Notes under the pieces: model-generated
Database searches by the model: none
Told to the model about the DNA's origin: nothing
Seen by the model: the letters and a program-made list of their open reading frames with translations, nothing else
Made by a program: the position numbers and the translations under genes
In this document: positions 8,226-62,637 of the stretch, piece after piece
Layout: each line of letters starts with the position of its first letter
How positions within the stretch are numbered: the first letter of the stretch is position 1
Virus record (IMG/VR): IMGVR_UViG_3300009104_001827
Location: 147,118 to 211,117 of that record
Length of the DNA: 64,000 nt
Direction: 5' to 3' (one strand)

Positions 8226-8230
8226 AAATC

Positions 8231-8259
8231 TTGACACAGGGCCCACTTTGTGATACCAT
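8231..8259 (+). promoter_or_regulatory. Sigma70-type promoter of the dnaB operon
   Basis: TTGACA-17 nt-TACCAT with TGn; ATG at 8270. Confidence 0.8.
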
Positions 8260-8269
8260 ATAAAACAAT

Positions 8270-11903: not shown

Positions 11904-12303
11904 ACAAGCCCCTTATGTTGGCACCGCGCTCCTATTCAAGAACCTTATTCTTTTAGCAAAAAGAATAGAGATATGTCCACATACAAAAGAACGAGTCAAA
12001 TACGGCGGGTATTGGTCGATTTTTTGCGGAGCAGTAGAAGAAAATGAAGCCCACTATATCGCTGCACACAGAGAGGTCTTCGAGGAGACTGGCCTAAATC
12101 TAGATAAAAAAATGTTTGTGCATCAAGAATTAGTTGAAGACCTACGCCTATATACTTATGAACTTGATGAAATGGTCCACCCTACATTGAATTACGAACA
12201 CACAGAGTGGGGGTATTTCAAAATAGATCAAATCAAAATAAGCCCCACCCCAATAGACGAAAAAATTGCGGAGAGGATACAGGGCTTCAGGCGGTCTGTG
12301 TAA
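11857..12303 (+). CDS. Nudix hydrolase
   Basis: Nudix box GAVEENEAHYIAAHREVFEETGL; LNYEHTEWGY. Confidence 0.88.
   Translation: MKDAHTGKEKTGENYEQAPYVGTALLFKNLILLAKRIEICPHTKERVKYGGYWSIFCGAVEENEAHYIAAHREVFEETGLNLDKKMFVHQELVEDLRLYTYELDEMVHPTLNYEHTEWGYFKIDQIKISPTPIDEKIAERIQGFRRSV
12298..12302 (+). promoter_or_regulatory. GTGTA motif
   Basis: GTGTAATTATAAATA-ATG(12313). Confidence 0.55.
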
Positions 12304-20900: not shown

Positions 20901-20904
20901 TGTA
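20900..20904 (+). promoter_or_regulatory. GTGTA motif
   Basis: GTGTAAGTTATC-ATG(20912). Confidence 0.55.
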
Positions 20905-20911
20905 AGTTATC

Positions 20912-23939: not shown

Positions 23940-23949
23940 CCTATTTAAT

Positions 23950-23954
23950 TACAC
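23950..23954 (-). promoter_or_regulatory. GTGTA motif
   Basis: Minus strand GTGTAATTAAATAGG-ATG(23939). Confidence 0.55.
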
Positions 23955-28437: not shown

Positions 28438-28455
28438 AACTCTTTAGAATAATCT

Positions 28456-28460
28456 TACAC
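28456..28460 (-). promoter_or_regulatory. GTGTA motif upstream of the head operon
   Basis: Minus strand GTGTAAGATTATTCTAAAGAGTT-ATG(28437). Confidence 0.55.
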
Positions 28461-28482: not shown

Positions 28483-30354
28483 CTACCCGATAAACATCGG
28501 AGTAAAAGTAGATTGGACATTATCTGCCTCAAGCTCCGTCATATCATAATATATCTTAATCATCCAATTACCAAGTACTAACGCAGAATACGAGTCTTTC
28601 CTTGCTTTCTCGGGCCCGCTTTGCCTTCGCAGGTTGTCCGGAAGATCAAAGGTTTGCGTCCCTTGTGGAGAAGTCTTGATTTGGATTAGTGCGCATTCGG
28701 ATTTAGTAAGATCTACCATATCGGTTTGATGCTCCACAAAGTCTATCATTTTTGCGGAGTCAGATTGCCGGGATTCAGACTCTGCAGTTCTTAAGAATTT
28801 GATTTTCTTAATTGGAATCTTCTTCCTCCTTTGCTCATGATACGCGTCATCCGTGGCCCTTGCGCCGAACCATATACGCTTATGATCGAAATTCGCTTGA
28901 AGTAATTCGTTGGCTATGCGAATCCATGATGAACTAGGTTTTCTTAAATAACAAATTACATTAGCTTCCGGATCGTACTCTCTCTTCGCCGCGAGCAAAT
29001 CATCCCGGTAATCTTCTTGCTTATCAAAATTAGGGCTCATAAGTCCAATCTTTCTCTTTTTCTTCTTAAACACACTACTTTCATTTACGGCATTAATAAA
29101 CTGAAGCCCGCCATTATAATCCCCAACTATGCAAACTATGTTAAAATTACTTAATATATAATCAAAATAATCTATATGTTGCTTTAGATTTGTTCCGGAC
29201 AGCGCATATCCATGGACCATAGTGCCCAATCTTTTATTGTCGTCTAGTTTAAATACCGTCATAGCAAAGTCGTCAGAACTTTCCGACTCGGCCCAGCTGG
29301 GGTCAAACGCTAAAAGGTACTTTGCCCCAACCTCCCCTTTTACCTCAACTGAAGGGGAGCCTCCATCCGAAACAGTACATTCAGACATCCTTGAAGTTTT
29401 AAAGTATCCGCTGCTGTCGTCTGTAAATATGGCTCCGAACTCTCGCTCAAACTGACTATGGCTCATTGAGCTTTTTGCTTGATTAATGAGATTCTGATCA
29501 TATAGTTGCAACGGGGCGCAATCGTAACTGAATTGCATGATCGTTCTAGCCGCATTATCCCGCTCGACATCTTCAGATAGGATTAGATCCTCAAATTGAC
29601 TATACAGTTTATACATATACTCAAATTTATAAGAAGCGGAGGATAACATGATTAGCTTATTGTTGGGCCACTGATGCCGGTCTTCCTCCTTCATTTTCCC
29701 TTCCTCTATTAAGCTGGTCTCTAACTTATACAGGTCGTCTCTTTGCGTTGGGTTTTCTACAACAGAAAGAAAGGGAACTATAACTTCATTATAAATCCTC
29801 TCAGGCATAAGGGCAAACTCATCGATTATAATCCTATGAAACCTAAAGCCCCGAAGCTTTTCTCCGTCTCCCAAGGGAAGGGCTCGAATCCTAGAGTCTC
29901 CTATCTCCATAAGCCACTCATCATTACTCTTGGATTTCCTTGTGATACATTGCGCCAGCAAAGCTGCTTCGGGCTTAGAGGCAATATCTTCAATTTTCTT
30001 AAATATCATTTTCGCCTGCCGAAAAGACTTCGAAAGTATTCCAATTTCAACCCCTTGGTTCATTATGGCGTCTAGAAATGCAAATATTCCTGTAGTAAAA
30101 GATTTTGACATCCCCCGGGACCAAACCCCCATAAAGTAATCGGTTTCAAACATGGCCTTGATTGCGGCGTGTTGAAAAGGAAAAAGTTTTATTCCTGAAA
30201 GTAGATCTGTAGCAAAAGTTACGTTTTCCCTTAGAAATTTATACAAGAGTATCCTCGCCTCTCGCTCCTCAATGAAACCCTTTTTATCTAAAAGAATTTC
30301 ATTAATATGAGGCCCCTTACTCTTTTTAAGTTGCTTTCCCGTTTCCCAGCTCAT
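28483..30354 (-). CDS. terL: Terminase large subunit
   Basis: LFPFQ, Walker A SRGMSKS, LRGFRFHRIIIDEF, SSAS, FEREF, nuclease AFDPS and RKDSYSAL. Confidence 0.9.
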   Translation of the reverse strand: MSWETGKQLKKSKGPHINEILLDKKGFIEEREARILLYKFLRENVTFATDLLSGIKLFPFQHAAIKAMFETDYFMGVWSRGMSKSFTTGIFAFLDAIMNQGVEIGILSKSFRQAKMIFKKIEDIASKPEAALLAQCITRKSKSNDEWLMEIGDSRIRALPLGDGEKLRGFRFHRIIIDEFALMPERIYNEVIVPFLSVVENPTQRDDLYKLETSLIEEGKMKEEDRHQWPNNKLIMLSSASYKFEYMYKLYSQFEDLILSEDVERDNAARTIMQFSYDCAPLQLYDQNLINQAKSSMSHSQFEREFGAIFTDDSSGYFKTSRMSECTVSDGGSPSVEVKGEVGAKYLLAFDPSWAESESSDDFAMTVFKLDDNKRLGTMVHGYALSGTNLKQHIDYFDYILSNFNIVCIVGDYNGGLQFINAVNESSVFKKKKRKIGLMSPNFDKQEDYRDDLLAAKREYDPEANVICYLRKPSSSWIRIANELLQANFDHKRIWFGARATDDAYHEQRRKKIPIKKIKFLRTAESESRQSDSAKMIDFVEHQTDMVDLTKSECALIQIKTSPQGTQTFDLPDNLRRQSGPEKARKDSYSALVLGNWMIKIYYDMTELEADNVQSTFTPMFIG

Positions 30355-31261
30355 TTTTATCTATATAGTATTGTAAGTCTACGCCCCACAGCGCCTCTCC
30401 TAGTTTTAATATTTTTGGAATAATTAACTCCGAGGCCTCCCTGCTCCCGGAAAAAACGAATTGACATGTGTCAGCAAAATCATGAGCCAAAACCCTCATG
30501 TTATGATAAATAAATTTAAGATTAGTCGAATGCGGGCCCCACCTGTTCTTTTTGTAAATTTCATTAATGGAGCTTTCTGTTATAATAAACAAATAACAAT
30601 CCATATCCCTTGCTCGCTCGAGCTCTCTCCTGAATCGGTCTAAATTATTTACGCTCAATGTCCCAATGAAGTCCCCTGCGCTTTTTCGGTCGATATAGGT
30701 ATAGTCATAATCACTTCCTGCTGCGGTATAGTCTCCGAAGTCAAGTTTCATTACGTCTGAATTACGGAAGCTCAGTGGCTTTTGTTCTCTTGTGTCAATA
30801 AAAATCTTAATATCATCAAGATCGACATCCCCAAACTCACAGGGAAGCCTTTTAGAAAATAAGGGGTCCACTCCAGCCTTCTGACAGGCCTGAGTATAGC
30901 TCCCAAAGTGATCGACATAAGTATCCACATCAGGAAGTTCAGCCAACCTTAACTCTACATGAGAAGGACCCCGCACAAGCTTTTTGTCACTTATCCTCTC
31001 CCGAAGCAACTTCAGAATATATTCCCCCACCTCCTTTTTTTCGTGAGACTTGCACCACTTAATTAATTGAGCCCTGCTATCAAAATCCTTACGGAAGTAG
31101 TCTTTTTTATTTTTAAACGGCAATGGCTCCCCTGTTAATTTATTCAATTTAGGAAAATACTTAGTATAATATTCGGCCATATTGGTGCCGTGTTGCTTAA
31201 GGTGACAATGAAGTCCCTTTTCGGAGGTAAAACCCTTGTCGCATATTTTACAATTAATCAT
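30326..31261 (-). CDS. ERCC4/XPF-family nuclease with N-terminal C2H2 zinc finger
   Basis: CKICDKGF...LHCHLKQH; IFIDTREQKP, LDFGDY, IDRKSAGDF. Confidence 0.85.
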   Translation of the reverse strand: MINCKICDKGFTSEKGLHCHLKQHGTNMAEYYTKYFPKLNKLTGEPLPFKNKKDYFRKDFDSRAQLIKWCKSHEKKEVGEYILKLLRERISDKKLVRGPSHVELRLAELPDVDTYVDHFGSYTQACQKAGVDPLFSKRLPCEFGDVDLDDIKIFIDTREQKPLSFRNSDVMKLDFGDYTAAGSDYDYTYIDRKSAGDFIGTLSVNNLDRFRRELERARDMDCYLFIITESSINEIYKKNRWGPHSTNLKFIYHNMRVLAHDFADTCQFVFSGSREASELIIPKILKLGEALWGVDLQYYIDKNELGNGKAT

Positions 31262-31929
31262 AACTCTACATCATATACTTTAAGGTTTTCCGCAGGCATC
31301 CTCCTCCGTTTCCCAAAGTATCCCAACCTTTGCCCTAGCCAAAAGACAATCAACGCGACCCTTGGAACCTTGAATATTTTTCCATCAGAATTCGTCACAG
31401 TTGGGACCTGGGAGTGCAATACCCGAGCAAGTAAGGTCCTCTCCATATCGACCATTTTACAGTCTTTAATTGAAATATTTCTCACCATCGGCCTATTCAC
31501 ATCATCGTAATCCGTCCAATTTCCCAAGTCAACACATGCCCCATCCCACCATTTTGAATAATCATTTATAAATTTACAATTCAATATAGAGATGTCCCTC
31601 GCGCCACCCTTTATGGTAATATGTTGTTTTGTGTTAGTTGATATAAATTCACAATTAACAAATTGAATATTTCCGCCCCGGACAATATCAACGCAGTCCT
31701 CCGTTCCCCCAATGATTTTTGAATCAGCAATATAAACATCATAGCAAAAAGACAGCTTAAGCCCCTCGTCGCCCTTGCTTCCGTCTATCACACAATCTCG
31801 AATTTCATAAGCAAGAGGATCCCTCCCTGGTCTCCACGAAAGCCCTAAAGCGGAAGTGTCATTAAATTTATCAACCCCCTTGGAGTGGCAATAAAATTTT
31901 TGTCCGAATATTTCTTTAGTAAACATCAC
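31258..31929 (-). CDS. Right-handed beta-helix (pectin-lyase-like) protein
   Basis: Repeating strands IRDCVIDG, IADSKIIGGTEDCVDI, NIQFVNCEF, DISILNCKF, NISIKDCKM. Confidence 0.7.
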   Translation of the reverse strand: MMFTKEIFGQKFYCHSKGVDKFNDTSALGLSWRPGRDPLAYEIRDCVIDGSKGDEGLKLSFCYDVYIADSKIIGGTEDCVDIVRGGNIQFVNCEFISTNTKQHITIKGGARDISILNCKFINDYSKWWDGACVDLGNWTDYDDVNRPMVRNISIKDCKMVDMERTLLARVLHSQVPTVTNSDGKIFKVPRVALIVFWLGQRLGYFGKRRRMPAENLKVYDVEL

Positions 31930-32984
31930 AGGGAATCAGACTTTGATATTCCAAGAACTCTAGCTTTCCAATCTGGCATTTTTTCCAGCTCATCCATTTC
32001 GTTGCTAATGAGCTTTTGTTGCATTTGAGCCATCTTTAACATGATACCCCTTTCCTCTTCCTCCTGAAACAGCTGCACTAGGTTAAGTATGCTTGCGTTC
32101 TTTGAAACCTGGCTTGCTATTCTTTTGGATCTGTCGCCCTGAAGCTTGGAGATTAAGGATTCCATTCTTTTTTCGCATTGATTGTATTCTTCGCTTTTTG
32201 TTTTTAGGATTTCAGTCAACCTAATGGTCATGTCTTGCTGCTCCTCCGCTTCATCAAACATTCTATTGAGTTTGTCCATTGCGCTTTGAATTCTTTTTAA
32301 ATGGATATAATCCATACAAACATTAATATACAGATTTATTTCGTCCGTGGTAAGATCCGGCTTATCCCAGGTAGCCCTAACAAATTCTGCCTCAAACAAA
32401 TTGCGGTCCTCAAGGCCCGTGTAAGTTTCAATTACCTGAAGAAACCGTGGTGCAGACATAAACTTCCTTAAAGCCTCTATGCATCGTTTGTATTGCACCG
32501 TCATTTTATCCTCGGAAATTTCGACGCCGACGCAATCCTGAATTTTCTTCATTATTTTGCTATCTGCCTTCGGAGGGGAATATTTAATGTTCATTGCGGT
32601 TTCATTTTTAGGAACATCTAAACCTTCCTCGTGAATAAAATCATGAACCGCCCAGAACTCTTTGCTCATGTGTTTTATTTCTGCCCCGGCAAATACGAGC
32701 CTTGCTAACGCCACGCTACTCACATCTGCGGCGGAGTTGTTTCGAATAAATTCCTTTTGCTCCTCTGTGAGCTGGATATCATCTTTTTTGCTAATGTGCC
32801 GAGTAGAATAGTCAATCCCCGCTTCCTTCATGAATTTTCTAACAAGTCGCCCCTCCCTTGTTCTGCCGTCAAGGGAGTCGTCCATAAAAACGTCTCTAGT
32901 TAATTTGGACAAATCTCCAATTATTGGAGCATTCTCTTTAATAAATGCCTTTTGATCTTCCGTAAGCTCCGGCAGCGGTTTCAT
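31926..32984 (-). CDS. Hypothetical protein (repeated N-terminal helical motif, C-terminal coiled coil)
   Basis: LTEDQKAFIKEN and LTEEQKEFIRNN repeat; ORF coupled to neighbours. Confidence 0.75.
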   Translation of the reverse strand: MKPLPELTEDQKAFIKENAPIIGDLSKLTRDVFMDDSLDGRTREGRLVRKFMKEAGIDYSTRHISKKDDIQLTEEQKEFIRNNSAADVSSVALARLVFAGAEIKHMSKEFWAVHDFIHEEGLDVPKNETAMNIKYSPPKADSKIMKKIQDCVGVEISEDKMTVQYKRCIEALRKFMSAPRFLQVIETYTGLEDRNLFEAEFVRATWDKPDLTTDEINLYINVCMDYIHLKRIQSAMDKLNRMFDEAEEQQDMTIRLTEILKTKSEEYNQCEKRMESLISKLQGDRSKRIASQVSKNASILNLVQLFQEEEERGIMLKMAQMQQKLISNEMDELEKMPDWKARVLGISKSDSL

Positions 32985-33765
32985 ATATAATAATTTCTCC
33001 TTTATCTAAAATAGACGCAGCCTTGTCTTTGAAAATTTTCTTTAAATTTTTCAATTGCTTATAGCCTGCTTTTCGACCCCTTTCGCTCGTCTTATACCCC
33101 ATCACCTTAGCGACTTCCTCTTCATCCATATGTTGGACGTAAAGCATATCGTAAACCTTGTATTGCTTCTCGGGCAACGCCTCTTTCATTGCCTTCGCTA
33201 ATTTACCCGCAGCCTCCTCAATGTCGACTTGAGTATCCTGTATGGAGCCAACCTCATGAGTGTGATGTTCTATGGTGACAGCCATCTTAATGTCATAGGC
33301 TGCCTTCTTAGTTTTGCTCCACTTTAAATACAATGGGCACTCGCTATCCTGTAGCCCGCTTGAGGTGAAGCCGCACAAACTGCCCGGGGTTATTCCTGGA
33401 TCCTTCCCGGATCTGGACTGATTAAAAGGGCAATTAAGGCAAGGTCGGACAAAATTAGAATAGTTATTACGCAAAATATTTTTCATTTGATTAGTAATAA
33501 TCTTATTGATCCACGGCCCTAGTGGGCGGCTCTGATCCCATTGGTCCCATTTTTTAAAAATATGAGCGCGTATAATTTGCTCTACATCCTCAAAATCAAA
33601 CCAGGACAGGGAGTCCAAAAACCACTTGCCCCGTCGCTTTCTTATCTCCAGATTAATGTCTTCGAATTTATCCTCAAAAGAGAACTGGGGAGCTTCACCA
33701 TCAAGATCCTTGTCTTTTGGAGGTTTTTCTTCTTTTTCTTTGTCTTTTTTTCTTGGGCGCTTCAT
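32938..33765 (-). CDS. Phage-encoded sigma70-family (group 4-like) sigma factor with Cys4 insert
   Basis: Region 2-like DFEDVEQIIRAHIFKKWDQWDQSRPLGPWINKIITNQMKNILR; CLNC...C...C; region 4-like ALPEKQYKVYDMLYVQHMDEEEVAKVMG. Start uncertain (ATG 33765 or TTG 33780). Confidence 0.75.
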   Translation of the reverse strand: MKRPRKKDKEKEEKPPKDKDLDGEAPQFSFEDKFEDINLEIRKRRGKWFLDSLSWFDFEDVEQIIRAHIFKKWDQWDQSRPLGPWINKIITNQMKNILRNNYSNFVRPCLNCPFNQSRSGKDPGITPGSLCGFTSSGLQDSECPLYLKWSKTKKAAYDIKMAVTIEHHTHEVGSIQDTQVDIEEAAGKLAKAMKEALPEKQYKVYDMLYVQHMDEEEVAKVMGYKTSERGRKAGYKQLKNLKKIFKDKAASILDKGEIIIYETAAGAYGRSKGIY

Positions 33766-34090
33766 TGGACGAATCTTCAACCGTTGCTTCCTCTATAGGG
33801 GGCAACAGGTCCCCTAAGCTTATCTTTCTATTCCCCAAGCCTCCTGAGGATACTTTACATTTAAAATCCCCTATTGTTGGGACTTCGTATATATCTGTAC
33901 CATCCAGCTCGTCCGAGCTCTCTTGGCGAAGGCGGTCGCCTTGCTTATTCTTTGCTCGAGAAACCGTTGTCCTTGGTTTAGTTGAGTCGCCTTTGCTTGA
34001 CAACAATTCTCCGCACTCCCCACAAAATTTAGGGACATCCATTGAGTATAGGTTTTTATGTCCACATGACTGACAATAAGTAAACGGCAT
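33701..34090 (-). CDS. Zinc-ribbon protein
   Basis: YCQSCG...KFCGECG at the N-terminus. Confidence 0.8.
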   Translation of the reverse strand: MPFTYCQSCGHKNLYSMDVPKFCGECGELLSSKGDSTKPRTTVSRAKNKQGDRLRQESSDELDGTDIYEVPTIGDFKCKVSSGGLGNRKISLGDLLPPIEEATVEDSSNEAPKKKRQRKRRKTSKRQGS

Positions 34091-34125
34091 ATACTATATA
34101 TAAGGCTTTTTTGTTAAAAAATCTA

Positions 34126-34722
34126 CTATATTAAATACCCAGCGATTAGCTTTGCCTGGTTTTGCATAAACTCTTCCGTCGTCATGCCCTCCACATCCCC
34201 AGGAAATGCTTCGATTTTTGAGATATAATCCACGCCCAATATTCCGATAACCTTACCATTTAAAGTCGTAATCGGAACATTATAAATTGCCTGCACACCC
34301 TTAGAGTTCAACAAGGACCTGAAACCGCTGTCTCGAATTTCATTAATATCCAAGCAAGAAAAAGACCCAACCGAGACTAATTCCGTAATATATTCGCTAT
34401 AGTTAGAAACCCTATGATCTTGAGAATGAATACATTCAGAGCTTATCCCCGCCTCCACAGTTTCGTGCGTACAGCTAAATTTTTGCTGGCCTCTTCCGGA
34501 AAAAAAATGCCCTCCATTATGAAATTCTAGAACGTAAGCCCTACCGGAGAACATCATCTGCTTAGTATACTTCAGTGCCGTATTAACGTTAGATCCCGCC
34601 CTTACGTGCCCCTCTACCGTATTCTTGTGGCGCTCAGACCATTTCTTTTTCGCCCAAACCCCAACTAAGGTAGCAACAGAAGACACGATAGTGGCAATGG
34701 CTGTGAGCAATTCAGTTTCCAT
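34126..34722 (-). CDS. Single-TM GAF-domain protein (holin-like)
   Basis: N-terminal TM; RAYVLEFHNG; GVQAIYNVPITTLNGKVIGILGVDY is a GAF-like C-terminus. Confidence 0.6.
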   Translation of the reverse strand: METELLTAIATIVSSVATLVGVWAKKKWSERHKNTVEGHVRAGSNVNTALKYTKQMMFSGRAYVLEFHNGGHFFSGRGQQKFSCTHETVEAGISSECIHSQDHRVSNYSEYITELVSVGSFSCLDINEIRDSGFRSLLNSKGVQAIYNVPITTLNGKVIGILGVDYISKIEAFPGDVEGMTTEEFMQNQAKLIAGYLI

Positions 34723-34727
34723 AATAT

Positions 34728-35042
34728 TTATTTACACTTACAAACTCCATTAATGCGCTGCTTTCTGTATACAAACGCAGATCCGAAAGTACATATAATA
34801 ACCGCTAATACAATCCATCCTAACCCAGATGTAGGCTGATCGGTATTAATTGATACAGAATTTGAATAGTACTCCTCCCTGTTTATTGTCCCATTTTTAT
34901 CTGTATCAACAGCTTCGAATGACTCTACTACATTTGGCACCGGAGCGGACGGTGCGGCGTTTCGACTTTTAAATATCTTCGGGCCACTACAGCCAGTGCT
35001 CATAAATATTAACAATATTAATAATATAATTTTATTCATCAT
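34728..35042 (-). CDS. Lipoprotein with EF-hand loop and C-terminal TM helix
   Basis: Signal peptide with lipobox STGC; DTDKNGTINREE; GLGWIVLAVIICTFGSAFVY-RK. Confidence 0.7.
   Translation of the reverse strand: MMNKIILLILLIFMSTGCSGPKIFKSRNAAPSAPVPNVVESFEAVDTDKNGTINREEYYSNSVSINTDQPTSGLGWIVLAVIICTFGSAFVYRKQRINGVCKCK
34733..34737 (-). promoter_or_regulatory. GTGTA motif
   Basis: Minus strand GTGTAAATAAATATT-ATG(34722). Confidence 0.55.
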
Positions 35043-35473
35043 CTCCTCCTACTGGGTATTGCATAAAAACCTACGACCATAAAGCATAGGTCTAAAAACG
35101 AAGAAAGCATAAGCCCCCCCGTAAGCCTCACTACATGAAAGTCCTCTCCTCCAAAAAACCAAGAAAATATACCCCACCTAGTGTTTTCGCCCTTAGGGAC
35201 AATAACATCATAACTAATATTTGGATTGTGAGCATAAAACAACATTAAATAACATAAAGTAAATGTTATAGACATAAATAATATTCGTCTAGTTATTTTT
35301 ACGAACGGATCCTTTGCTTGGGCGGCTTGACTTTTAATAGCCGCTTCAATCATCTTCTCATCCCTTGCGGCCAGCATGAGCTGATCTTGTCGCTTCTGCT
35401 CAAGCCAGGCGTTCAAGATGTTTGCTCCTATCTTGATTCCGGCGCCCAGAATAGTATTTAGAATTGCGCCCAT
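35039..35473 (-). CDS. Membrane protein, 3TM-holin-like
   Basis: Start ATG 35473 (TAATG overlap); amphipathic N-terminus, short coil, DPFVKITRR, two TMs, GFY..SRRR end. Confidence 0.55.
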   Translation of the reverse strand: MGAILNTILGAGIKIGANILNAWLEQKRQDQLMLAARDEKMIEAAIKSQAAQAKDPFVKITRRILFMSITFTLCYLMLFYAHNPNISYDVIVPKGENTRWGIFSWFFGGEDFHVVRLTGGLMLSSFLDLCFMVVGFYAIPSRRR

Positions 35474-35655
35474 TATTTTTTGTTTTTCCCTAGGTCGGCA
35501 AGCCCCTGGCCCAAGATATAGGCTATCATGGGGGTCACAATAGTCGTGATATGATCCGCATCCCAGCCCCACCCGAAATGGTGATTAAGCATAGGAACAG
35601 CGGTGGCCACTACGGCTGCCCAAAATTTCTTGCTGTGGTAGAATTGTTTTTCCAT
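35473..35655 (-). CDS. Small two-TM holin-like membrane protein
   Basis: SKKFWAAVV...AYILGQGLAD; SD AGGAGA. Confidence 0.65.
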   Translation of the reverse strand: MEKQFYHSKKFWAAVVATAVPMLNHHFGWGWDADHITTIVTPMIAYILGQGLADLGKNKK

Positions 35656-35676
35656 TATTTTTTCTCCTTATTAAAG

Positions 35677-36621
35677 TTACATTATTTCTATAATGGCCCA
35701 AAGGGCCGTAATCGCCATTGCTGCAATAATTAAATATTTTTTATTAAACTTTTTCTTCTCAGGCTTTGGATCAGGTTCTGGATCAGGTTCTGGATCAGGT
35801 TCTTTCTCCTCGGACTTAACGTCTAGATAATAGGGTCCGACGGCATTAATGATCGCATCCCGATATAAAGAATCCTCCATGAAAAAGTACCCTTTGTTCC
35901 CGAACCATCGCCCCCAGCTATTTTGAAACTCCCAATATAGCTTCCCGTCAATCTCCTTCCAGCCAATCATCGACACTGCATGCCCACCGACAACTTCGGA
36001 GGACAAAAACTTATCAGAATTCACAACGCCCGTGCTGTCGGTTTGAAAAAAATGCCTTCTGACCTTAATCGACGTCCATAGAGGCTCTTTTAATAAAGCC
36101 GACTTAATCCGGTCTGTATCTCCCTTGGGAATTACATAGTATCCATTAATCTTATACTTAAGCGCGTTCTCCGGAGCCTCAGGAGACATGGGCGCCCCCT
36201 CCTTGCGGAGGTCTGGCCAATATTTCTCTTCGCAGCACCCTTCTTTGACCAGCCCCTTGCATGCGCCACGGATGGTCGTGCCGGAATAATCTTCTCCCGG
36301 CCAAGGGTCATATAATTGCCCTTTTTTATAAATCCACATAGCACTAGGCTCCTTGTCCTTGAATTCTTCCGTCGAACCGTAAACAACGCGGCCGCTGTGG
36401 CCAACGCAAGACCCAATTGACCCTTGGTTCTTGACGCGAGGCGTAAGGTCGCGCCTGGAAAACTCCTTTAGATCAACCTCTCTGGCTCGCCATATCCTTG
36501 AAGTGATCCAGTCTCTGGAATCAACGGGGGCATCAGGCACGTTTAATTTACATCTTCCGAAATATTTAGCTCTAGCTTTTTGCGCTATCCAACTTCCCGA
36601 TAATATATTTAAGTATTTCAC
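35677..36621 (-). CDS. Papain-family (C1A) cysteine peptidase with Pro-rich linker and C-terminal TM anchor
   Basis: NQGSIGSCVGHS, GGHAV, QNSWG..FG.KGY; EPDP repeat; hydrophobic tail. Confidence 0.88.
   Translation of the reverse strand: MKYLNILSGSWIAQKARAKYFGRCKLNVPDAPVDSRDWITSRIWRAREVDLKEFSRRDLTPRVKNQGSIGSCVGHSGRVVYGSTEEFKDKEPSAMWIYKKGQLYDPWPGEDYSGTTIRGACKGLVKEGCCEEKYWPDLRKEGAPMSPEAPENALKYKINGYYVIPKGDTDRIKSALLKEPLWTSIKVRRHFFQTDSTGVVNSDKFLSSEVVGGHAVSMIGWKEIDGKLYWEFQNSWGRWFGNKGYFFMEDSLYRDAIINAVGPYYLDVKSEEKEPDPEPDPEPDPKPEKKKFNKKYLIIAAMAITALWAIIEIM
35767..35802. repeat. 12-bp x3 coding repeat (EPDP linker)
   Basis: tggatcaggttc x3. Confidence 0.85.
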
Positions 36622-37285
36622 TTCTCAGTATGTCCTCTTTTCCAAATCTAAATGCATGTATACCTCTCTTTACACTTTCCCTGTCGTTAAACAGGTCAAA
36701 CATGGCCGGAAATCCACTCTTTCCATTGATGTCGCTCTGCATAAAGTCTCCACAAATAAACAATTTGCAATTCTCCCCAATTCTAGTGACAAGCGTCGTA
36801 AGCTCCTTATAGGTAAAGTTTTGAGCTTCATCTGCAATTACGATCTTATCCTTCCAGTTTGCTCCTCTAAGATAATTTATCGGCATTGCAGAAATTCTGC
36901 CACTTTCAAGCATTTCCCTTTTGGCAGTATTGTTTTTAGGAAGCATTTCATAAAGCTTGTCCTCCAGTGGCGCCATATAGGGATTGAATTTTTCATCTAT
37001 ATCCCCAGGCAAGGCCCCAAGCCCCTTTTCTGCGCTCTCAATGACTGTGCGGACATATAGTAAATCCATCTTATCTGACGCACTCAAAAGCCTCAACGCA
37101 GAATAAACTGCCATATAAGTTTTAGTGGAGCCCGCCGGTCCGGCGACAAACATTATCTTAGTATCATCGTTGAACGCGATAGACAAAAACCTTTTCTGCC
37201 TATCCGTCAACCTTAGTGAATGGATATGAACGCTTTGTGCCAATTGTGGGATAACAAAATTTTTTTTAGACTTATCGTGAGCCAT
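36572..37285 (-). CDS. phoH: PhoH family ATPase
   Basis: GPAGSTKT, LGALPGDIDEKFNPY, YLRGANW, DEAQN, TRIGENCK, GDFMQSD. Confidence 0.93.
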   Translation of the reverse strand: MAHDKSKKNFVIPQLAQSVHIHSLRLTDRQKRFLSIAFNDDTKIMFVAGPAGSTKTYMAVYSALRLLSASDKMDLLYVRTVIESAEKGLGALPGDIDEKFNPYMAPLEDKLYEMLPKNNTAKREMLESGRISAMPINYLRGANWKDKIVIADEAQNFTYKELTTLVTRIGENCKLFICGDFMQSDINGKSGFPAMFDLFNDRESVKRGIHAFRFGKEDILRSEILKYIIGKLDSAKS

Positions 37286-37301
37286 TAGCTATATATGTAT
37301 A

Positions 37302-37327
37302 TACACACTACAGAACGATAAAGTGTA
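37302..37327. promoter_or_regulatory. Back-to-back GTGTA motifs at a divergent junction
   Basis: TACAC 37302-37306 (16 nt before phoH ATG) and GTGTA 37323-37327 (10 nt before ATG 37338). Confidence 0.6.
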
Positions 37328-37337
37328 CTTATATATA

Positions 37338-37544
37338 ATGAAAGATACCAGAGATATACTGAGCTACCTCAGCAATAATCTTAATGGGTACGAATCTACC
37401 ACTTGGCTTAAAGCGGAAAATGATCTTCTCGACGGGCTCTCGCCCGCAGATATGATACTTGACGGCGAGGCGAGAAGGGTTGGTAGGATTTTGCCGAAAG
37501 AGATAAAGAGAATTAAAGCTAAGAAAAAACAGAAGAAGGCTTAG
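37338..37544 (+). CDS. Stand-alone MbcA/ParS/Xre antitoxin C-terminal (toxin-binding) domain
   Basis: TTWLKAENDLLDGLSPADMILDGEARRVGRIL matches the WL..PN..L.G..P..L...G...V..L signature. Confidence 0.7.
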   Translation: MKDTRDILSYLSNNLNGYESTTWLKAENDLLDGLSPADMILDGEARRVGRILPKEIKRIKAKKKQKKA

Positions 37545-38269: not shown

Positions 38270-41200
38270 TTAGTCAGTATCTACTTTATTACCAGTATCT
38301 TCCCAGGAATCTTTCCATTTTGCAGACCCCAGTATCGACAGGAAAAGTTCCCCGTTGGGAATTATGGTTCCACCAGGAAGGGCATTCCCTATCTTCTCTT
38401 CCCATGAATCACATATTCCGCGCATTCTAGCCAGGCATTGCGAGTGCGCAGCCCCACCGATGTAAATCACTTCGCAATCACCATCTACGCCTGCGGCCCC
38501 ATATTTATCGCAGTATTCAGTTGTGATTTCAATTAGGTCTGCGTCCGTAAATCCCGGATGGCCTTTATATGGGCCGCCGGGTTGAAAAGTGTTGCTATCA
38601 CTATAATTCGATGCGACCTGCGGATTTCTAGCGAAAGCTTCAGCCTCCTCTTGGGTGTCAAAATAATCGTTGGGAAATATTGACATTGTTCCCGCTAAAT
38701 TACTGCCCTCCCGGACGCCAGCGGCGCCTTGGTGTTTAGAATTATCATGTGATCCGTCGTAATCATCAAAACCAACAACAGGTAATTTAAAAGTTCCACC
38801 CCCACTCTTTACCCACCAAGGGGGGATATGCTCACCGTCCACGTGGGGAAGAGAGTGGTTAGTATACGGAAATACCGAGTCACCCACTGGCGTACCCCCC
38901 CAACGGCCGTCAGGATTATAAGCATTCCACGGGTTCGAGGCGCCGACAACATACGAAGTTCCGGCACCAAGATGGGTAGTGAATTCATCGGACGAATTTA
39001 ACCTAAGAAACGCCTGACATTCGTAAAGCTCCCCCTTCCACCAAGCCCGGTCCCCCGGGTAATATTGCGTTCGCGGAGTCATCGTGACGTATATGTCAGC
39101 ATTATCTCCCGCGCCCTCAGGTTTCCCTCCTTCACTTAGTTCCCAGCCTCCATAATCCCAAATTCTCTCGAGATTTATATTCTCCCATAGCCAATTTCTT
39201 CCAGCAACCCATTTTCTCGTCTTATGATCGTACCAGGAAAACCCTAGTTTCTCCCTTTCTTTTGCCCTGCGTATCACCCAGTTTATCGCCGCATCGCGCG
39301 AAGCAAACATTTTAGACCCCCTACAGGTTATTGATACATCCTCAGAGTCATAAATATCCGTAGAGCCTTTCAGTATGTTGTCGCTTCCTGCTTCTGCGTT
39401 TATGTACCATTTAGTAAGCTCCTGCTTGTTTCCGGAATCTAGGTAGCTCTCTGAATAAAACGCGCCCTTCGCTCCAGTCAATAGCCAGCCCAGGGAATCC
39501 CCATTTTCACCAATGTATTCCCACTTGTTATTTGCTCCGCCAGGAGCATCATCTCCTGTTCCGTAGCCAGATGCACTTCCCCCTTCCTCATTAAATCTCC
39601 ACACCTTCCAAACGCCGCCGTCTTGGGTTTTTACTAAATCCCCCCTATAGTAGCCGGGCGGGGAATATGGACGCACCTGACAGCCGCCCCATGCCCCCGG
39701 TTCTAAGTTGTTGCCGAAACCCCAACCCGACATTTGAAGGGAGGGGTGGAGCTTTCTAAGTAATCGTTCCCATGACTTTTTTCTTAAAAGGGGCTGGTCA
39801 TAAGCCTCACCCAACCACATCGGGCCATTCGAGGAATCCGGAAGGAACTGGTTGGTGACTTTCTTCGCTCCGGACCAGTCCACCTTACCAAAAGCGTCCC
39901 CCACCTCAGTTGGGGGTGTGTTTATCGACGAATTTGCGCCCGCATCCACGTCCGCTTGCGTGGCAATACGATAGTCTCCCCACATCATCGGATGGTCCTC
40001 AGCACCCCCCATCGTTGACTCCCCGGGTACGTTGCGATATATGGGGTCCAACACGGTAGGAGATAATCCATCACTGATCTTGTCGTCATATTCCTCCTGC
40101 CACCTAGATTTACTTTCGCTAGGCGGGGGAAAGGGCTCGTAGGAGCCCAAATGCCAAAAGGCATAAATTGCGCAGGTATCCCACGCAGCTCCCACACCAT
40201 GACTGCCGCAATTTTTAGCCAAGAACAGATCTCCATCAGACAATATTACGTCTCCCGCGCAGTGAGGAAGGCTGGCGTTAGTATAAGCGCTTCTATATAA
40301 GCTTTCTCCTAGTGGTCCAGATCCAGCAGGTTGGGCGGCAGTTCCAGGCTCGCTCGCGTAATACGGCCGATACATCGCAGGCAAACCATTAGTCATAGTT
40401 TCCCAGTCGGCTGCAGACACTCTTCCATATTCCCCCCACGTCGGCCTCCAGTCGAACATTCTCCAGGGATGAAAGAACATTATGGAATTGTAAACATTAA
40501 AAAGACCCCAATCGTGGCCAACTTGACCACCGTACCAAAGGGCATCTGCACTAAGAACATTCCATCCGCTTTTCTTGGCGATAAAAGAGGAATCTCCGCG
40601 ATGCTCCAATTCGCCAATACCCAAACCTAGTTCGCTGGTCCCCGATGCGAAGTTCAGCATGTATTGCCTAATCGAGTCACCGGCACCCGTGGGCCAATAC
40701 CCATTGGGCAAGTCAAAAGTCCACTCCTCCCACTCCTCCCCAAACTCATCGACCCAATCGTCAATAGTCTCGTGAAGCTCGCCATTGACCCACTCCCGAT
40801 CCCACCCAGGGAAAACCACGGTATATCTCTTGCCCAGTTCAATATCTTTCGCCCATATTATTTCCGGGGCATAAATCGTCGATGCCAGCGGATTATATTC
40901 GTCAATTTCCTCCGCATTTATAAACCTTTCGGCAAGTTCAAACCTCAATTCTCGATTATGTCTAGCCGTATATGGCCTATCCTTCCAATTCTCAATCATA
41001 TCTTTGGCGGAATAAAGCGCGAATTTCTCAGGATTCTGGTCAGCGCCTTGATTATGAGAAGTGCAACCTCCGTCGCCGGGAGTGCCGCCGTCGGAAACCT
41101 GATTGTCGGGCCCTCCGTGATGATTGCCGATGACCCAATGCGGCTTAGTCCCTGCCCCGTCCTCAATACTGCTCTTCCAAACCCCGGTGGTCCCAGGCAT

Positions 41201-58573: not shown

Positions 58574-58611
58574 TACACTAAATAGTTATAGGTCCCAACA
58601 ATATAAGTGTA
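58574..58611. promoter_or_regulatory. Back-to-back GTGTA motifs at a divergent junction
   Basis: TACAC 58574-58578 (19 nt before ATG 58554) and GTGTA 58607-58611 (44 nt before ATG 58656). Confidence 0.55.
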
Positions 58612-58655
58612 AAGAAGTTAAGCGCGCATGGAGCGTCATATCATATAAAATAAAA

Positions 58656-62616: not shown

Positions 62617-62621
62617 GTGTA
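62617..62621 (+). promoter_or_regulatory. GTGTA motif
   Basis: GTGTAATATAAATTTATAGAA-ATG(62638). Confidence 0.55.
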
Positions 62622-62637
62622 ATATAAATTTATAGAA

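What the first reader, a model, noticed from the sequence alone, without database searches (positions are those of the whole stretch)
32938..34090. Phage sigma factor with a Cys4 insertion between regions 2 and 4, paired with a zinc-ribbon gene
Seen: region 2-like and region 4-like segments are separated by RPCLNCPF...SLCGF...ECPLY, and the overlapping upstream gene is a CxxC...CxxC zinc ribbon with an acidic/basic tail. Established: sigma70 group 4 proteins usually have a short plain linker. Inference: the zinc module may sense metal or redox or dock a co-activator, and the zinc-ribbon protein could be a gp33-like co-activator or an anti-sigma. The pair sits three genes upstream of terL.
Basis: partly seen in the sequence, partly recalled or inferred. 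Interest (0 to 1): 0.65.

Follow-up and report, generated by a model that had tools for sequence, protein, structure and literature searches.

The report
Phage sigma factor with zinc-type module
A 211-kb uncultured marine phage encodes an RNA-polymerase sigma factor with four invariant cysteines, probably a zinc-binding mini-domain, between its two DNA-reading domains, always preceded by a small zinc-ribbon gene; this layout has not been described for sigma factors and occurs in hundreds of related ocean phages.

Summary
Window 32938-33780(-) encodes a 275-280 aa sigma-70-family protein. It has an ECF-like sigma2 (residues 33-112) and a sigma4 (187-262). The connector is about 73 residues long. 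Its first 48 residues form a confidently modelled mini-domain around C114, C117, C136 and C148.

- These four Cys and W154 are the only 100% invariant columns in 137 family representatives that are at most 50% identical to each other.
- The gene just upstream (33701-34090, -) encodes a 129-aa protein with an N-terminal CxxC-x13-CxxC zinc ribbon. This gene, the sigma gene and a ~350-aa gene form an overlapping trio in about 70 related viral contigs.
- The family appears only in viral records and in probably mis-binned MAG contigs. No Pfam, NCBIfam or PDB entry covers the module.
- The phage has no recognisable RNA polymerase. It has a second sigma gene and host-type TTGACA/TATAAT early promoters.
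- A clade-conserved GTGTAA element lies 6-9 nt before many structural-gene start codons and before the block containing this sigma. It is a candidate phage-sigma promoter.

Metal or redox sensing, and a co-activator or anti-sigma role for the zinc-ribbon protein, remain untested. The complex prediction gave no verdict. I rate this a new variant of a known kind, of moderate-to-high interest.

The parts
32938..33780 (-). Sigma-factor gene, 280 aa from TTG 33780. The alternative start ATG 33765 gives 275 aa.
   Evidence: ORF. Pfam Sigma70_r2 and r4_2. TIGR02937 at 1.5e-9. PHROG 1740. Fold matches are all sigma factors. More than 868 homologues.
33445..33684 (-). Sigma2 domain (residues 33-112), with the ECF-like motifs D65-x2-Q68 and W90...N101..R104.
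   Evidence: Model pLDDT is 91-98. It superposes on sigma2 of RpoE and SigE at rmsd 2.1-2.3 A over 73 residues, Z 7.9-8.4.
33301..33444 (-). Cys4 mini-domain (residues 113-160). Cys codons: C114 at 33439-33441, C117 at 33430-33432, C136 at 33373-33375, C148 at 33337-33339. Invariant W154 lies in the helix that follows.
   Evidence: These are the only invariant columns in 137-140 diverse members. The model has pLDDT 89-96 except in the variable loop 121-130. Predicted order is a knuckle at 113-116, short strands, then helix 149-157. No Pfam match when the module is scanned alone.
33223..33300 (-). Variable connector (residues 161-186), the likely sigma3.2-like segment that threads the RNAP cleft and RNA-exit channel.
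   Evidence: Low conservation and lower pLDDT of 72-81. The role is inferred by analogy with the ECF sigma2/4 linker (PMC6372665).
32995..33222 (-). Sigma4 domain (residues 187-262), with an unusually long, invariant basic loop (residues 228-239, YKTSERGRKAGY) inside the helix-turn-helix.
   Evidence: Pfam r4_2 over residues 198-228. Model pLDDT 93-98. Alignments to RNAP-bound SigL, SigH and SigE span both domains. Invariant columns G228, E233, G235, R236, A238-Q242.
33701..34090 (-). Zinc-ribbon gene, 129 aa. The N-terminal ribbon C6-x2-C9-x13-C23-x2-C26 is encoded at 34001-34090. An acidic, probably disordered middle follows, then a conserved 'P-x-I-x-K-L-x-Y' motif near residue 71 and a basic tail.
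   Evidence: ORF. Alignment of 29 orthologues. Found immediately upstream of sigma in about 70 loci. Only weak generic zinc-ribbon matches.
33701..33780 (-). Overlap of the zinc-ribbon gene's 3' end with the sigma gene's 5' end (sigma in the +1 frame), suggesting translational coupling.
   Evidence: Sequence. Relatives overlap by -1 to 164 nt, measured from the first possible start codon and so upper bounds. No indel in the independent contig. An RNA-library contig covers 33646-33801.
34732..34737 (-). GTGTAA element 9 nt upstream of the ATG of the first gene of the 198aa-ZnR-sigma-352aa block. It is a candidate phage-sigma promoter (-10-like), and the only promoter-like signal found near the block.
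   Evidence: Position. Genome-wide enrichment. No good sigma70-type promoter in 31800-37400.
34126..34722 (-). 198-aa gene with an N-terminal hydrophobic segment and weak GAF-like matches; a conserved upstream neighbour of the pair.
   Evidence: Pfam GAF_2 at E 0.04 and PHROG 14038 at 5.6e-7. Synteny.
31926..32984 (-). 352-aa gene overlapping the sigma gene's 3' end by 47 nt. It is the conserved third member of the trio. It has a tandem 'TE(D/E)QK-FI-N' repeat at the N-terminus and a charged, helix-favouring C-terminal half that looks like a coiled coil by eye. It may be a small terminase or a DNA-binding factor.
   Evidence: ORF. Present downstream of sigma with a -47 to +2 nt junction in nearly all loci. 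No significant family match.
28455..28460 (-). GTGTAA element 17 nt upstream of the 528-aa gene that follows TerL (portal position).
28483..30354 (-).
   Evidence: Pfam Terminase_6N at 2e-10 and PHROG 2 at 2.6e-26.

Best explanation
The gene encodes a phage sigma factor of the sigma-70 family that redirects the host's RNA polymerase to phage promoters.

Architecture, shown by sequence and model:
- an ECF-like sigma2 (residues 33-112);
- a 48-residue mini-domain built on four invariant cysteines (113-160), with a CxxC knuckle, short strands, and the last Cys at the start of a helix, which is a treble-clef or zinc-ribbon-like order;
- a variable connector (161-186);
- a sigma4 (187-262).

Inferences:
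- The four Cys most likely hold one structural Zn2+ that keeps this small module folded.
- The module cannot thread the RNA-exit channel. It therefore probably sits where sigma3 sits in larger sigmas, at the upstream edge of the -10 region, while residues 161-186 act as the sigma3.2-like thread.
- The zinc-ribbon protein encoded by the overlapping upstream gene is made together with the sigma (translational coupling). It most likely acts as an accessory factor of this sigma-RNAP complex, with its basic or AT-hook-like tail on DNA. Its sign (activator or inhibitor) is unknown.

Proposed programme: host sigma70 reads the early TTGACA-N17-TATAAT promoters. Phage sigma(s) then read GTGTAA elements placed 6-9 nt before start codons, which would give leaderless or near-leaderless transcripts of structural genes and of the block that holds this sigma. 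Which of the two phage sigmas reads GTGTAA is not settled.
For: Sigma identity:
- Pfam r2 passes its cut-off and r4_2 is sub-threshold. TIGR02937 scores 1.5e-9 over residues 54-232. PHROG 1740 matches.
- The deep-alignment AF2 model has pLDDT 86 and pTM 0.66.
- Every top PDB match is a sigma factor: SigL Z 8.7, SigH 8.5, SigE holoenzyme 8.1 at rmsd 4.0 A over 145 residues spanning both domains.
- Atlas and BFVD neighbours are sigma factors.

Cys4 module:
- The four Cys and W154 are the only invariant columns in 137-140 representatives.
- Typical spacing is C-x2-C-x8-C-x9/11-C. 78 of 137 carry a fifth Cys in the module; in 57 of 137 the last Cys is part of a CxxC.
- The module is confidently modelled.

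Sigma3-position argument:
- The model aligns to three-domain sigmas over 183-206 residues (SigB 200, sigma28 202, SigB/F/G clusters 183-194).
- In SigL the ECF connector threads the cleft and exit channel in a fully extended conformation (PMC6372665).

Pairing:
- The ZnR-sigma-350aa order holds, with overlapping junctions, in about 70 loci whose zinc-ribbon proteins fall to about 20% identity.

Dependence on host RNAP:
- No RNAP beta or beta' family hit in a genome rated 100% complete.
- Canonical sigma70 promoters are concentrated at 1-62 kb.

GTGTAA:
- 15 of 44 copies end 6-9 nt before a start codon.
- It is the top hexamer of all 4096 at that position in three genomes with 43%, 36% and 34% GC.
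- It is under-represented elsewhere in the window.
- It precedes this block.
- It resembles the phiEco32 gp36 element AATGTA at -11.5 (PMC12276001). It also contains GTAA, the first four bases of the GTAAAA oligonucleotide bound by an engineered SigE region 2 (PDB 5or5 title).

Presence in RNA libraries: contigs cover 33282-33441 and 33646-33801.
Against: - No metal has been measured. Cys4 could bind an Fe-S cluster or form disulfides.
- I could not inspect model coordinates, so the proximity of the four thiols is inferred from the order of secondary structure and from conservation, not measured.
- Sequence scores to curated sigma models are marginal: r2 at 24.1 against a cut-off of 24, r4_2 below its cut-off, TIGR02937 at 37.7 against 42.9.
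- Foldseek E-values are only about 0.03. VIA Z values of 8-9 lie in the range the tool calls common for helical proteins. The case rests on the unanimity of the hits and the two-domain coverage.
- No prediction supports ZnR-sigma contact (no verdict), and no ZnR-sigma fusion exists among longer homologues.
- GTGTAA could belong to the second phage sigma, which sits in an operon with a host-type promoter and is also conserved in the clade. Given its fixed distance to ATG, it could instead be a translation signal.
- The RNA-library contigs may derive from contaminating DNA.
Confidence: 0.6

Rival explanations
1. The Cys4 module is a regulatory sensor. Loss of Zn, oxidation of the thiols, or a redox-active [4Fe-4S] or [2Fe-2S] cluster would switch the sigma on or off. 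This is the way metals act on CorE-type sigmas and the way clusters act in WhiB-like sigma partners.
For: Four invariant thiols in a transcription factor are compatible with sensing. CorE-like ECF sigmas use a CxC in the sigma2/sigma4 linker plus a C-terminal Cys-rich domain to respond to Cu, Cd or Zn (PMC8999054). 78 of 137 members carry a fifth Cys in the module.
Against: - No member lacks any of the four Cys, and the module is modelled as a compact fold. This pattern is typical of structural sites.
- There is no C-terminal Cys-rich domain: the protein has only these four Cys.
- The spacing C-x2-C-x8-C-x9/11-C does not match the C-xn-C-x2-C-x5-C pattern that I recall for WhiB-like proteins (from memory, not tested).
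- A phage that makes this sigma only during infection has less obvious need for a redox switch.
Confidence: 0.15
2. The Cys4 module is mainly a docking platform, and the zinc-ribbon protein is its ligand. That ligand would be either an anti-sigma that holds the sigma inactive until a late signal, or an appropriator like phiEco32 gp79 that displaces host sigma and stabilises the phage sigma on RNAP.
For: - The pair is strictly syntenic with overlapping reading frames.
- The zinc-ribbon protein looks like a largely disordered protein with short conserved motifs. I recall disordered anti-sigmas such as FlgM, but this was not tested here.
- phiEco32 sets a precedent for a small phage protein that binds RNAP and the phage sigma's C-terminal domain (PMC12276001).
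Against: - The complex prediction scored 0.00, which counts as no verdict.
- The zinc-ribbon protein has no ZAS motif.
- Its sequence diverges quickly while the sigma is 55-90% conserved, which is unusual for a tight interface outside the ribbon and the P71 motif.
- No fused ZnR-sigma proteins were found.
Confidence: 0.3
3. The pairing is only positional. The zinc-ribbon protein and the 352-aa protein serve DNA packaging or another late function, for example as small-terminase-associated DNA binders, and merely share an operon with the sigma upstream of terL.
For: - The trio lies in the packaging and structural block, three genes from TerL.
- The basic or AT-hook-like tail (KRGRPRK in relatives) indicates DNA binding, not necessarily binding at promoters.
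- No interaction evidence exists.
Against: The ZnR stop and sigma start overlap or abut in about 70 loci, while other neighbours vary: a methyltransferase, SNase and nuclease come and go between sigma and TerL.
Confidence: 0.25
4. The protein is not a working sigma factor. It would instead be a sigma-derived DNA-binding regulator or a decoy that binds host RNAP or a host anti-sigma without directing initiation.
For: Sequence scores are marginal. Sigma4 has an atypical 12-residue loop in its helix-turn-helix. No -35 element accompanies the candidate promoter.
Against: - Both domains are present. In the model they sit in the relative arrangement seen in RNAP-bound ECF sigmas, at rmsd 4.0-5.5 A over 142-147 residues.
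- ECF-type sigma2 motifs are conserved.
- The phage lacks its own RNAP and has a non-sigma70 promoter-like class to be read.
Confidence: 0.08

Closest known systems
ECF (group 4) sigma factors, e.g. M. tuberculosis SigL and SigH, E. coli SigE
   Same: The sigma2 and sigma4 folds are shared, and so is their relative placement as seen on RNAP (Z 8.0-8.7). The sigma2 sequence signature is shared (TIGR02937 at 1.5e-9; alignment to SigR region 2). Region 1.1 is absent, and Pfam finds no sigma3.
   Different: ECF sigmas have a short sigma2/4 linker, fully extended in SigL (PMC6372665). Here the connector is about 73 residues with a folded Cys4 module. The score is below the TIGR02937 cut-off. No downstream anti-sigma gene is present. 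The family is found only in viral sequences.
Coliphage phiEco32 gp36 (phage sigma) with gp79 (RNAP-binding co-factor)
   Same: Both are phage-encoded two-domain sigmas that redirect host RNAP to middle and late promoters defined mainly by a -10-region element with a TGTA core: AATGTA at -11.5 in phiEco32 against GTGTAA here. A small phage protein cooperates with gp36 (PMC12276001). The fold matches gp36 chain 9m7y_F at Z 7.2.
   Different: [quoted passage not shown] No zinc ribbon is mentioned for gp79 in the passages read, and adjacency of the gp36 and gp79 genes was not checked. The phiEco32 genome is 77.5 kb, against 211 kb here.
CorE / CorE2 metal-responsive ECF sigmas (group ECF238) of Myxococcus xanthus
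   Same: They show that cysteines in the sigma2-sigma4 linker (a CxC motif) take part in metal-dependent activity of a sigma factor (PMC8999054).
   Different: CorE needs a C-terminal Cys-rich extension. This family has none: all four Cys lie between sigma2 and sigma4. The CorE metals are regulatory signals; here invariance and a folded model point to a structural site.
Group 3 sigmas (SigB/SigF/SigG, sigma28/FliA)
   Same: Overall length and three-part shape are similar. The model aligns over 183-206 residues, including the middle part.
   Different: Their middle domain is the helical sigma3 (Pfam Sigma70_r3), which has no cysteines that I know of. Sigma70_r3 is not detected here. The sigma2 sequence is ECF-like rather than group-3-like.
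T4 late system: gp55 (sigma2-only) with gp33 and the sliding clamp
   Same: It is a phage late sigma that recognises only a -10-type element without a -35 element, with a small partner protein (textbook knowledge, not tested here).
   Different: This sigma has its own sigma4, so a gp33-type sigma4 substitute is not required. Neither protein gave PHROG or Pfam hits to T4-type late factors.
TFB / TFIIB zinc ribbon plus B-reader of archaeal and eukaryotic initiation
   Same: An initiation factor carries a small Cys4 zinc module next to the segment that enters the polymerase cleft. PMC6372665 lists these as functional analogues of the sigma linkers.
   Different: There is no homology. TFB's ribbon is N-terminal and docks at the RNA-exit/dock region. 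The position of this module on RNAP is unknown.

Membership tests
Sigma-70 family | Sigma2 domain (regions 2.1-2.4) that binds the clamp helices and reads the -10 element | tested here: met
   Pfam Sigma70_r2 at 24.1 bits against a cut-off of 24. Superposition on sigma2 of RpoE and SigE at rmsd 2.1-2.3 A over 73 residues, Z 7.9-8.4. Conserved D65, Q68, W90, N101 and R104.
Sigma-70 family | Sigma4 helix-turn-helix domain | tested here: inconclusive
   Pfam r4_2 scores 17.9 bits, below its 25.7 cut-off. The model region 187-262 (pLDDT 93-98) is included in alignments to full-length RNAP-bound ECF sigmas. The turn of the helix-turn-helix is 12 residues long.
Sigma-70 family | Binds RNAP core and confers promoter-specific initiation | not testable with these tools
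   Only indirect evidence: the genome has no RNAP genes and carries a non-sigma70 promoter-like element.
ECF (group 4) sigma factors | Only sigma2 and sigma4, joined by a short unstructured linker | tested here: not met
   The connector is about 73 residues (113-186), and 113-160 is modelled as a folded Cys4 module. The model spans 233 residues where SigL spans 165.
ECF (group 4) sigma factors | Score above the curated TIGR02937 threshold | tested here: not met
   37.7 bits against a cut-off of 42.9.
ECF (group 4) sigma factors | Co-transcribed cognate anti-sigma factor, usually downstream | tested here: not met
   The downstream gene encodes a 352-aa protein with no anti-sigma family hit. The small partner gene lies upstream and has no ZAS motif.
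CorE-like metal-responsive sigmas (ECF238) | [quoted passage not shown] | tested here: not met
   The only Cys are at 114, 117, 136 and 148. None lies C-terminal of sigma4, and the motif is CxxC rather than CxC. The definition is taken from PMC8999054.
Zinc-binding anti-sigma (ZAS) factors, for the upstream protein | H-x3-C-x2-C motif in an anti-sigma domain | tested here: not met
   The invariant residues are C6, C9, C23 and C26, with no conserved His. Pfam gives only weak generic zinc-ribbon hits at E of 0.007 or worse.
Zinc-ribbon fold, for the upstream protein | Two CxxC knuckles separated by about 10-20 residues | tested here: met
   C6-x2-C9-x13-C23-x2-C26 is invariant in 29 orthologues. 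There are weak hits to Zn_ribbon_Nudix, RPB9, DZR and Rpb12. Metal binding itself was not tested.
phiEco32 gp36-type phage sigma | Detectable sequence homology to gp36 | tested here: not met
   tblastn against 50,697 phage records at E up to 0.01 found no match. Only fold-level similarity to 9m7y_F, Z 7.2.

The most novel reading that the evidence does not exclude
The Cys4 module is a new DNA-reading or RNAP-docking zinc domain that replaces sigma3. It would read the double-stranded 'GTG' just upstream of the melted 'TAA...' of GTGTAA promoters, so this sigma would need no -35 element and could start transcripts right at the ATG. That would make it a bacterial-type sigma that has converged on the zinc-ribbon-plus-reader design of TFB/TFIIB. 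The co-translated zinc-ribbon/AT-hook protein would be a dedicated co-activator on upstream DNA.
Probability: 0.15. Interest if true: 0.85.

Novelty: new variant of a known kind. Interest (0 to 1): 0.62.

Why it matters
All sigma-70-family structures described in the papers and PDB entries I consulted join sigma2 to sigma4 in one of two ways: through the helical sigma3 plus the 3.2 finger, or through a plain linker. An obligatory metal-type mini-domain at that position would be a third solution. It sits at the place that governs extended -10 contacts, initial transcription and promoter escape.

The family is large: at least 216 clusters at 50% identity score E below 1e-30, and 545 viral contigs carry a relative. 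It belongs to roughly 200-kb ocean phages with no cultured member, so it probably controls late gene expression in a widespread, unstudied phage lineage.

It comes with three testable items: a candidate promoter (GTGTAA), a candidate partner protein, and apparent widespread leaderless transcription. Compact orthogonal sigma/promoter pairs are also useful parts for synthetic biology. If zinc is required, late gene expression of these phages would depend on a metal that I recall being scarce in surface seawater (general knowledge, not tested here).

Tried and rejected
- **Sequencing frameshift or programmed frameshift fusing the two genes.** Rejected. An independent 148.5-kb contig has no indel in the overlap. 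About 70 relatives keep two ORFs with overlaps from -1 to 164 nt and not always the same frame relation. The longer homologues P0147, P0159, P0232 and P0200 have no zinc ribbon at their N-termini.
- **Complex prediction of sigma with the zinc-ribbon protein, using alignments A1 and A3.** Score 0.00, 'no answer'. This is not evidence either way.
- **First AF2 model from 30 close sequences.** pLDDT 70.9 and a poorly defined Cys region. It was superseded by the 140-sequence model.
- **Sequence searches for the module alone.** Pfam at E up to 10 found nothing. A profile search of the PDB with A1 gave only a weak SigR region 2 match at E 0.3.
- **Profile of the zinc-ribbon family against the PDB.** Only generic ribbons such as Rpb12 and eL37, at E of 0.07 or worse. 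The Atlas returned only unnamed viral clusters.
- **Cultured relatives.** No sigma match in 50,697 phage records. TerL is only about 27% identical to Bacillus phage terminases.
- **Host clues from genome bins.** Six hits lie in MAGs labelled Halobacteriovorax, Cellvibrionales (a 210,818-bp contig), Neomarinimicrobiota, Flavobacterium and Proteobacteria. These are mutually inconsistent, so they are taken as mis-binned phage contigs.
- **'Moraphage' paper (PMC12619734).** Read to see whether the lineage is described. Its phages are predicted to infect Bacteroidota and lack RNAP. Nothing links them to this clade, whose early promoters are TTGACA/TATAAT type.
- **Sigma70-type promoter for the block.** None better than 9 of 12 matches, and fewer candidates than in shuffled sequence.
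- **Paralogy of the two phage sigmas.** BLASTP found no significant similarity between them.
- **Model coordinates.** The tools do not expose them, so Cys-Cys distances could not be measured.


Full report
**1. What is in the sequence**

The window is the last 64 kb of a 211,117-bp IMG/VR virus record that CheckV rates 100% complete. On the minus strand, 32938-33780 is an ORF of 280 aa starting at TTG. An ATG five codons further in (33765) would give 275 aa, and that is the form held by the ESM Atlas. The ORF 33701-34090 (129 aa) ends inside the start of the first one, overlapping it by 80 or 65 nt, with the sigma ORF in the +1 frame. The overlap is A-rich, so I checked for an assembly frameshift. 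A 148.5-kb contig from a different study covers 31000-36700 with 102 substitutions, and its only gap is a 12-nt deletion at 35759. It has no indel in the overlap.

The protein has exactly four cysteines, at 114, 117, 136 and 148. The upstream protein begins MPFTYCQSCG-x13-FCGECG. Downstream lie genes of 352, 223 (beta-helix) and 311 aa (C2H2 finger plus ERCC4 nuclease), and then TerL.

**2. Is it a sigma factor?**

- *Sequence.* Pfam Sigma70_r2 just passes its threshold (24.1 against 24 bits, residues 59-106). Sigma70_r4_2 is sub-threshold (17.9 bits, residues 198-228). NCBIfam TIGR02937 (sigma70-ECF) gives 1.5e-9 across residues 54-232 but stays under its cut-off. PHROG 1740, 'RNA polymerase sigma factor', gives 6e-6. 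A profile of the family aligns region 2 to SigR of Streptomyces only weakly.
- *Model.* A first AF2 model from 30 close homologues was mediocre (pLDDT 70.9). A model from 140 diverse homologues reached pLDDT 86 and pTM 0.66.
- *Fold matches.* All leading Foldseek matches to the PDB are sigma factors. VIA re-alignment gives Z 8.7 for SigL, 8.5 for SigH and 8.1 for E. coli SigE in the holoenzyme. The SigE match has rmsd 4.0 A over 145 residues spanning both domains. The N-terminal domain alone fits sigma2 at 2.1-2.3 A over 73 residues. The BFVD and ESM-Atlas shape searches also return only sigma factors.

No single score is overwhelming, and the tool warns that Z near 8 is common for helical proteins. 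The case rests on the unanimity of the hits, the coverage of two domains in the RNAP-bound arrangement, and the conserved ECF-type motifs D65-x2-Q68 and W90...N101..R104. Together these make the assignment secure; I put it at about 0.9.

**3. The Cys4 module**

The word search found 868 relatives. The exhaustive profile search found 499 clusters at 50% identity, 216 of them below E 1e-30. I ran that costly search because the claim that the module is family-wide, and absent from other sigma families, depends on it.

In 137 full-length representatives, the only columns that never vary are the four Cys and W154. The usual spacing is C-x2-C-x8-C-x9/11-C. The window's subclade has an 18-residue loop between the second and third Cys. 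78 of 137 members have a fifth Cys in the module; in 57 of 137 the last Cys is part of a CxxC.

In the deep model the module (113-160) is confident, at pLDDT 89-96 outside the variable loop 121-130. Its predicted order is a short helix or knuckle at 113-116, three short strands, then a helix starting right after C148. That order is what a treble-clef or zinc-ribbon-like site looks like. This is an inference, because I could not read the coordinates.

Residues 161-186 are variable and less confident. Sigma4 follows at 187-262. Scanned alone, the module matches no Pfam family.

The total distance from the end of sigma2 to sigma4 is about 73 residues. The model spans 233 residues where SigL spans 165. 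phiEco32 gp36 has a 34-residue linker (PMC12276001).

**4. Where the module probably sits**

In ECF holoenzymes the sigma2/4 linker enters the active-centre cleft and leaves through the RNA-exit channel; in SigL it does so in a fully extended conformation (PMC6372665). A folded 48-residue domain cannot do that.

The model also superposes on three-domain sigmas over 183-206 residues: S. aureus SigB 200, sigma28 202, and bacterial SigB/F/G clusters at TM 0.42-0.43. I therefore infer that the module occupies the sigma3 position at the upstream edge of the -10 region, and that residues 161-186 act as the thread. This is inference, not shown.

**5. The partner gene**

In two contigs found through identical proteins and in about 70 of the 80 viral loci fetched with the family profile, the gene immediately upstream of sigma encodes a 103-164-aa protein starting with the same zinc ribbon. 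In most of the remaining loci my motif filter found no sigma ORF, and in a few the contig ended. That gene ends at or inside the sigma start, with overlaps of -1 to 164 nt measured from the first possible start codon. A 346-390-aa gene follows sigma with a -47 to +2 nt junction.

The zinc-ribbon proteins diverge to about 20% identity. Three features persist:

- the four Cys;
- a motif around P71, (V/I)P-x-(I/L)-x-K-L-x-Y;
- a C-terminal tail that is either basic (often KRGRPRK, which resembles an AT-hook) or, in more distant clades, an E-C-K-(S/P)-A-R motif.

The family has no significant match in Pfam, PHROGs, NCBIfam or the PDB and has only viral neighbours in the Atlas. Tight, conserved coupling argues for a shared function. 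The one complex prediction returned no verdict, and I found no natural fusions.

**6. Genome context and a candidate promoter**

No RNAP beta or beta' family is detectable in the genome. The T7-type RNAP family search was uninformative because its controls were silent.

A second sigma-like gene (G000 133960-134586, 208 aa, Pfam r2 at 24.8 bits) lies in an operon behind a good host-type promoter. It is unrelated in sequence to the Cys4 sigma. It is conserved at 34-42% identity in three related complete genomes.

About 30 A-tract + CTTGACA-N17-TAnnnT promoters cluster at 1-62 kb. In 19 of 41 sigma70-like matches an ATG that opens an ORF of at least 40 codons lies 4-9 nt after the -10 box, and in 11 cases exactly 6 nt after it. 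This implies leaderless early mRNAs.

The hexamer GTGTAA occurs 44 times in the genome:

- 15 copies end 6-9 nt before a predicted start, and 5 more end 15-21 nt before one. Of the other same-composition hexamers, the overlapping AGTGTA scores 7 and the rest at most 2.
- In an unbiased count of all 4096 hexamers at that position, GTGTAA ranks first in this genome. It also ranks first in two related genomes with 36% and 34% GC, whose Cys4 sigmas are 71% and 59% identical to this one.
- It precedes the largest structural genes (1439, 3032, 1649, 842 and 637 aa) and the gene after TerL (window 28455-28460).
- It precedes the first gene of the 198aa-ZnR-sigma-352aa block (window 34732-34737). That block has no decent sigma70 promoter.
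- No -35 element accompanies it.

Two known elements look similar. The phiEco32 gp36 element is AATGTA, centred at -11.5. GTGTAA also contains GTAA, the first four bases of the GTAAAA oligonucleotide bound by an engineered SigE region 2 (PDB 5or5 title).

I read GTGTAA as a -10-type promoter for a phage sigma. Its ECF-like flavour mildly favours the Cys4 sigma. However, the second sigma sits behind a host promoter, so it could equally be the one that switches on GTGTAA genes, including this block. A translation-signal reading is not excluded either.

**7. Presence elsewhere**

Metatranscriptome contigs from two runs cover 33282-33441 (inside the Cys module) and 33646-33801 (the overlap). They also cover parts of the 198-aa gene. 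The tool cautions that DNA can be present in such libraries.

The stretch is found in four runs that may be its source and, at about 98% identity, in another study. Among 185,579 species genomes, relatives occur only in six MAG contigs with inconsistent taxonomic labels, one of them a 210,818-bp contig. I take these to be mis-binned phage contigs.

**8. Comparison with known systems**

The sigma works like an ECF or phage sigma such as phiEco32 gp36. It fails the ECF definition on linker length, on the curated score, and on the anti-sigma arrangement.

It shares with CorE-type sigmas the use of linker cysteines (PMC8999054) but lacks their C-terminal Cys-rich domain.

The zinc-ribbon protein is not a ZAS anti-sigma.

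The review of non-canonical ECF sigmas lists N- and C-terminal extensions in at least 26 groups. In the passages I read it describes no folded inter-domain module. My other literature searches found no sigma with such a module.

**9. Verdict**

This is a real, strongly conserved, virus-restricted sigma subfamily. It has an invariant Cys4 mini-domain, most likely binding Zn, at the sigma3 position, and it is encoded in a fixed trio with a zinc-ribbon gene. It is a new variant of a known kind. The sensing and co-activator ideas are open hypotheses.

Noticed in passing
G000 1-62000 (outside the window); in the window e.g. 2599-2640 and 8230-8272 (+): About 30 host-type promoters (A-tract, CTTGACA, 17-nt spacer, TAnnnT). 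In 19 of 41 matches an ATG opening an ORF follows the -10 box by only 4-9 nt (11 at exactly 6 nt). Many early mRNAs of this phage would therefore be leaderless.
   Followed up: partly
window 12298-12303(+), 20900-20905(+), 23949-23954(-), 28455-28460(-), 34732-34737(-), 36670-36675(-), 58607-58612(+), 62617-62622(+): GTGTAA lies just upstream of same-strand gene starts. It is the top-ranked hexamer at 6-9 nt before starts in this genome and in two related genomes, and it is under-represented elsewhere (13 in the window against 19.3 expected).
   Followed up: yes
G000 133960-134586 (+) = L007:13960-14586: A second, unrelated sigma-like gene (208 aa, Sigma70_r2 at 24.8 bits). It lies downstream of a dNMP-kinase-like gene and a TTGACT-N17-TATGAT promoter, and it is conserved in three related genomes. 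Together with the Cys4 sigma it suggests a two-sigma cascade.
   Followed up: partly
window 38270-58039 (-): A single ORF of 6,589 aa. The genome also has ORFs of 3,810, 3,032, 1,649, 1,606 and 1,439 aa, which is unusually large for a 211-kb phage. The 995-aa protein ends in a Peptidase_S74 chaperone domain, typical of tail fibres.
   Followed up: no
window 33061-33096 (-), sigma residues 228-239: The sigma4 helix-turn-helix has a 12-residue, almost invariant basic loop (YKTSERGRKAGY) where the usual short turn would be. It may be a second unusual DNA or RNAP contact in this family.
   Followed up: no
window 31926-32984 (-): The 352-aa protein overlapping the end of the sigma gene has two tandem N-terminal 'TE(D/E)QK-FI-(E/R)NN' repeats and a long charged, helix-favouring C-terminal half. 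It has no family match but is as syntenic as the zinc-ribbon gene. It may be a small terminase or a further transcription factor.
   Followed up: no
window 34126-35572 and 35677-36621 (-): Upstream of the pair are four small genes:
- a 198-aa protein with an N-terminal hydrophobic segment and faint GAF similarity;
- a 104-aa protein with a lipoprotein-like signal (…STGC) and an EF-hand-like DTDKNGTINREE loop;
- a 177-aa hydrophobic protein;
- a 314-aa protein with a C-terminal PEPD repeat and a hydrophobic tail.
This may be a lysis or envelope cassette. An independent strain differs by a 12-nt deletion in the PEPD repeat at 35759.
   Followed up: no
window 30326-31261 (-): A fusion of an N-terminal C2H2-type zinc finger, a homing-endonuclease-associated repeat and an ERCC4-type nuclease, directly upstream of and overlapping TerL.
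   Followed up: no
L094-L099 (genome contigs): Phage contigs of this clade sit in public MAGs labelled Halobacteriovorax, Cellvibrionales (a 210,818-bp contig), Neomarinimicrobiota, Flavobacterium and Proteobacteria. These are probably binning errors and should not be used as host evidence.
   Followed up: partly
P0232 (metagenomic homologue): One family member carries a partial duplication of the sigma2 N-terminal segment ahead of the complete protein.
   Followed up: no
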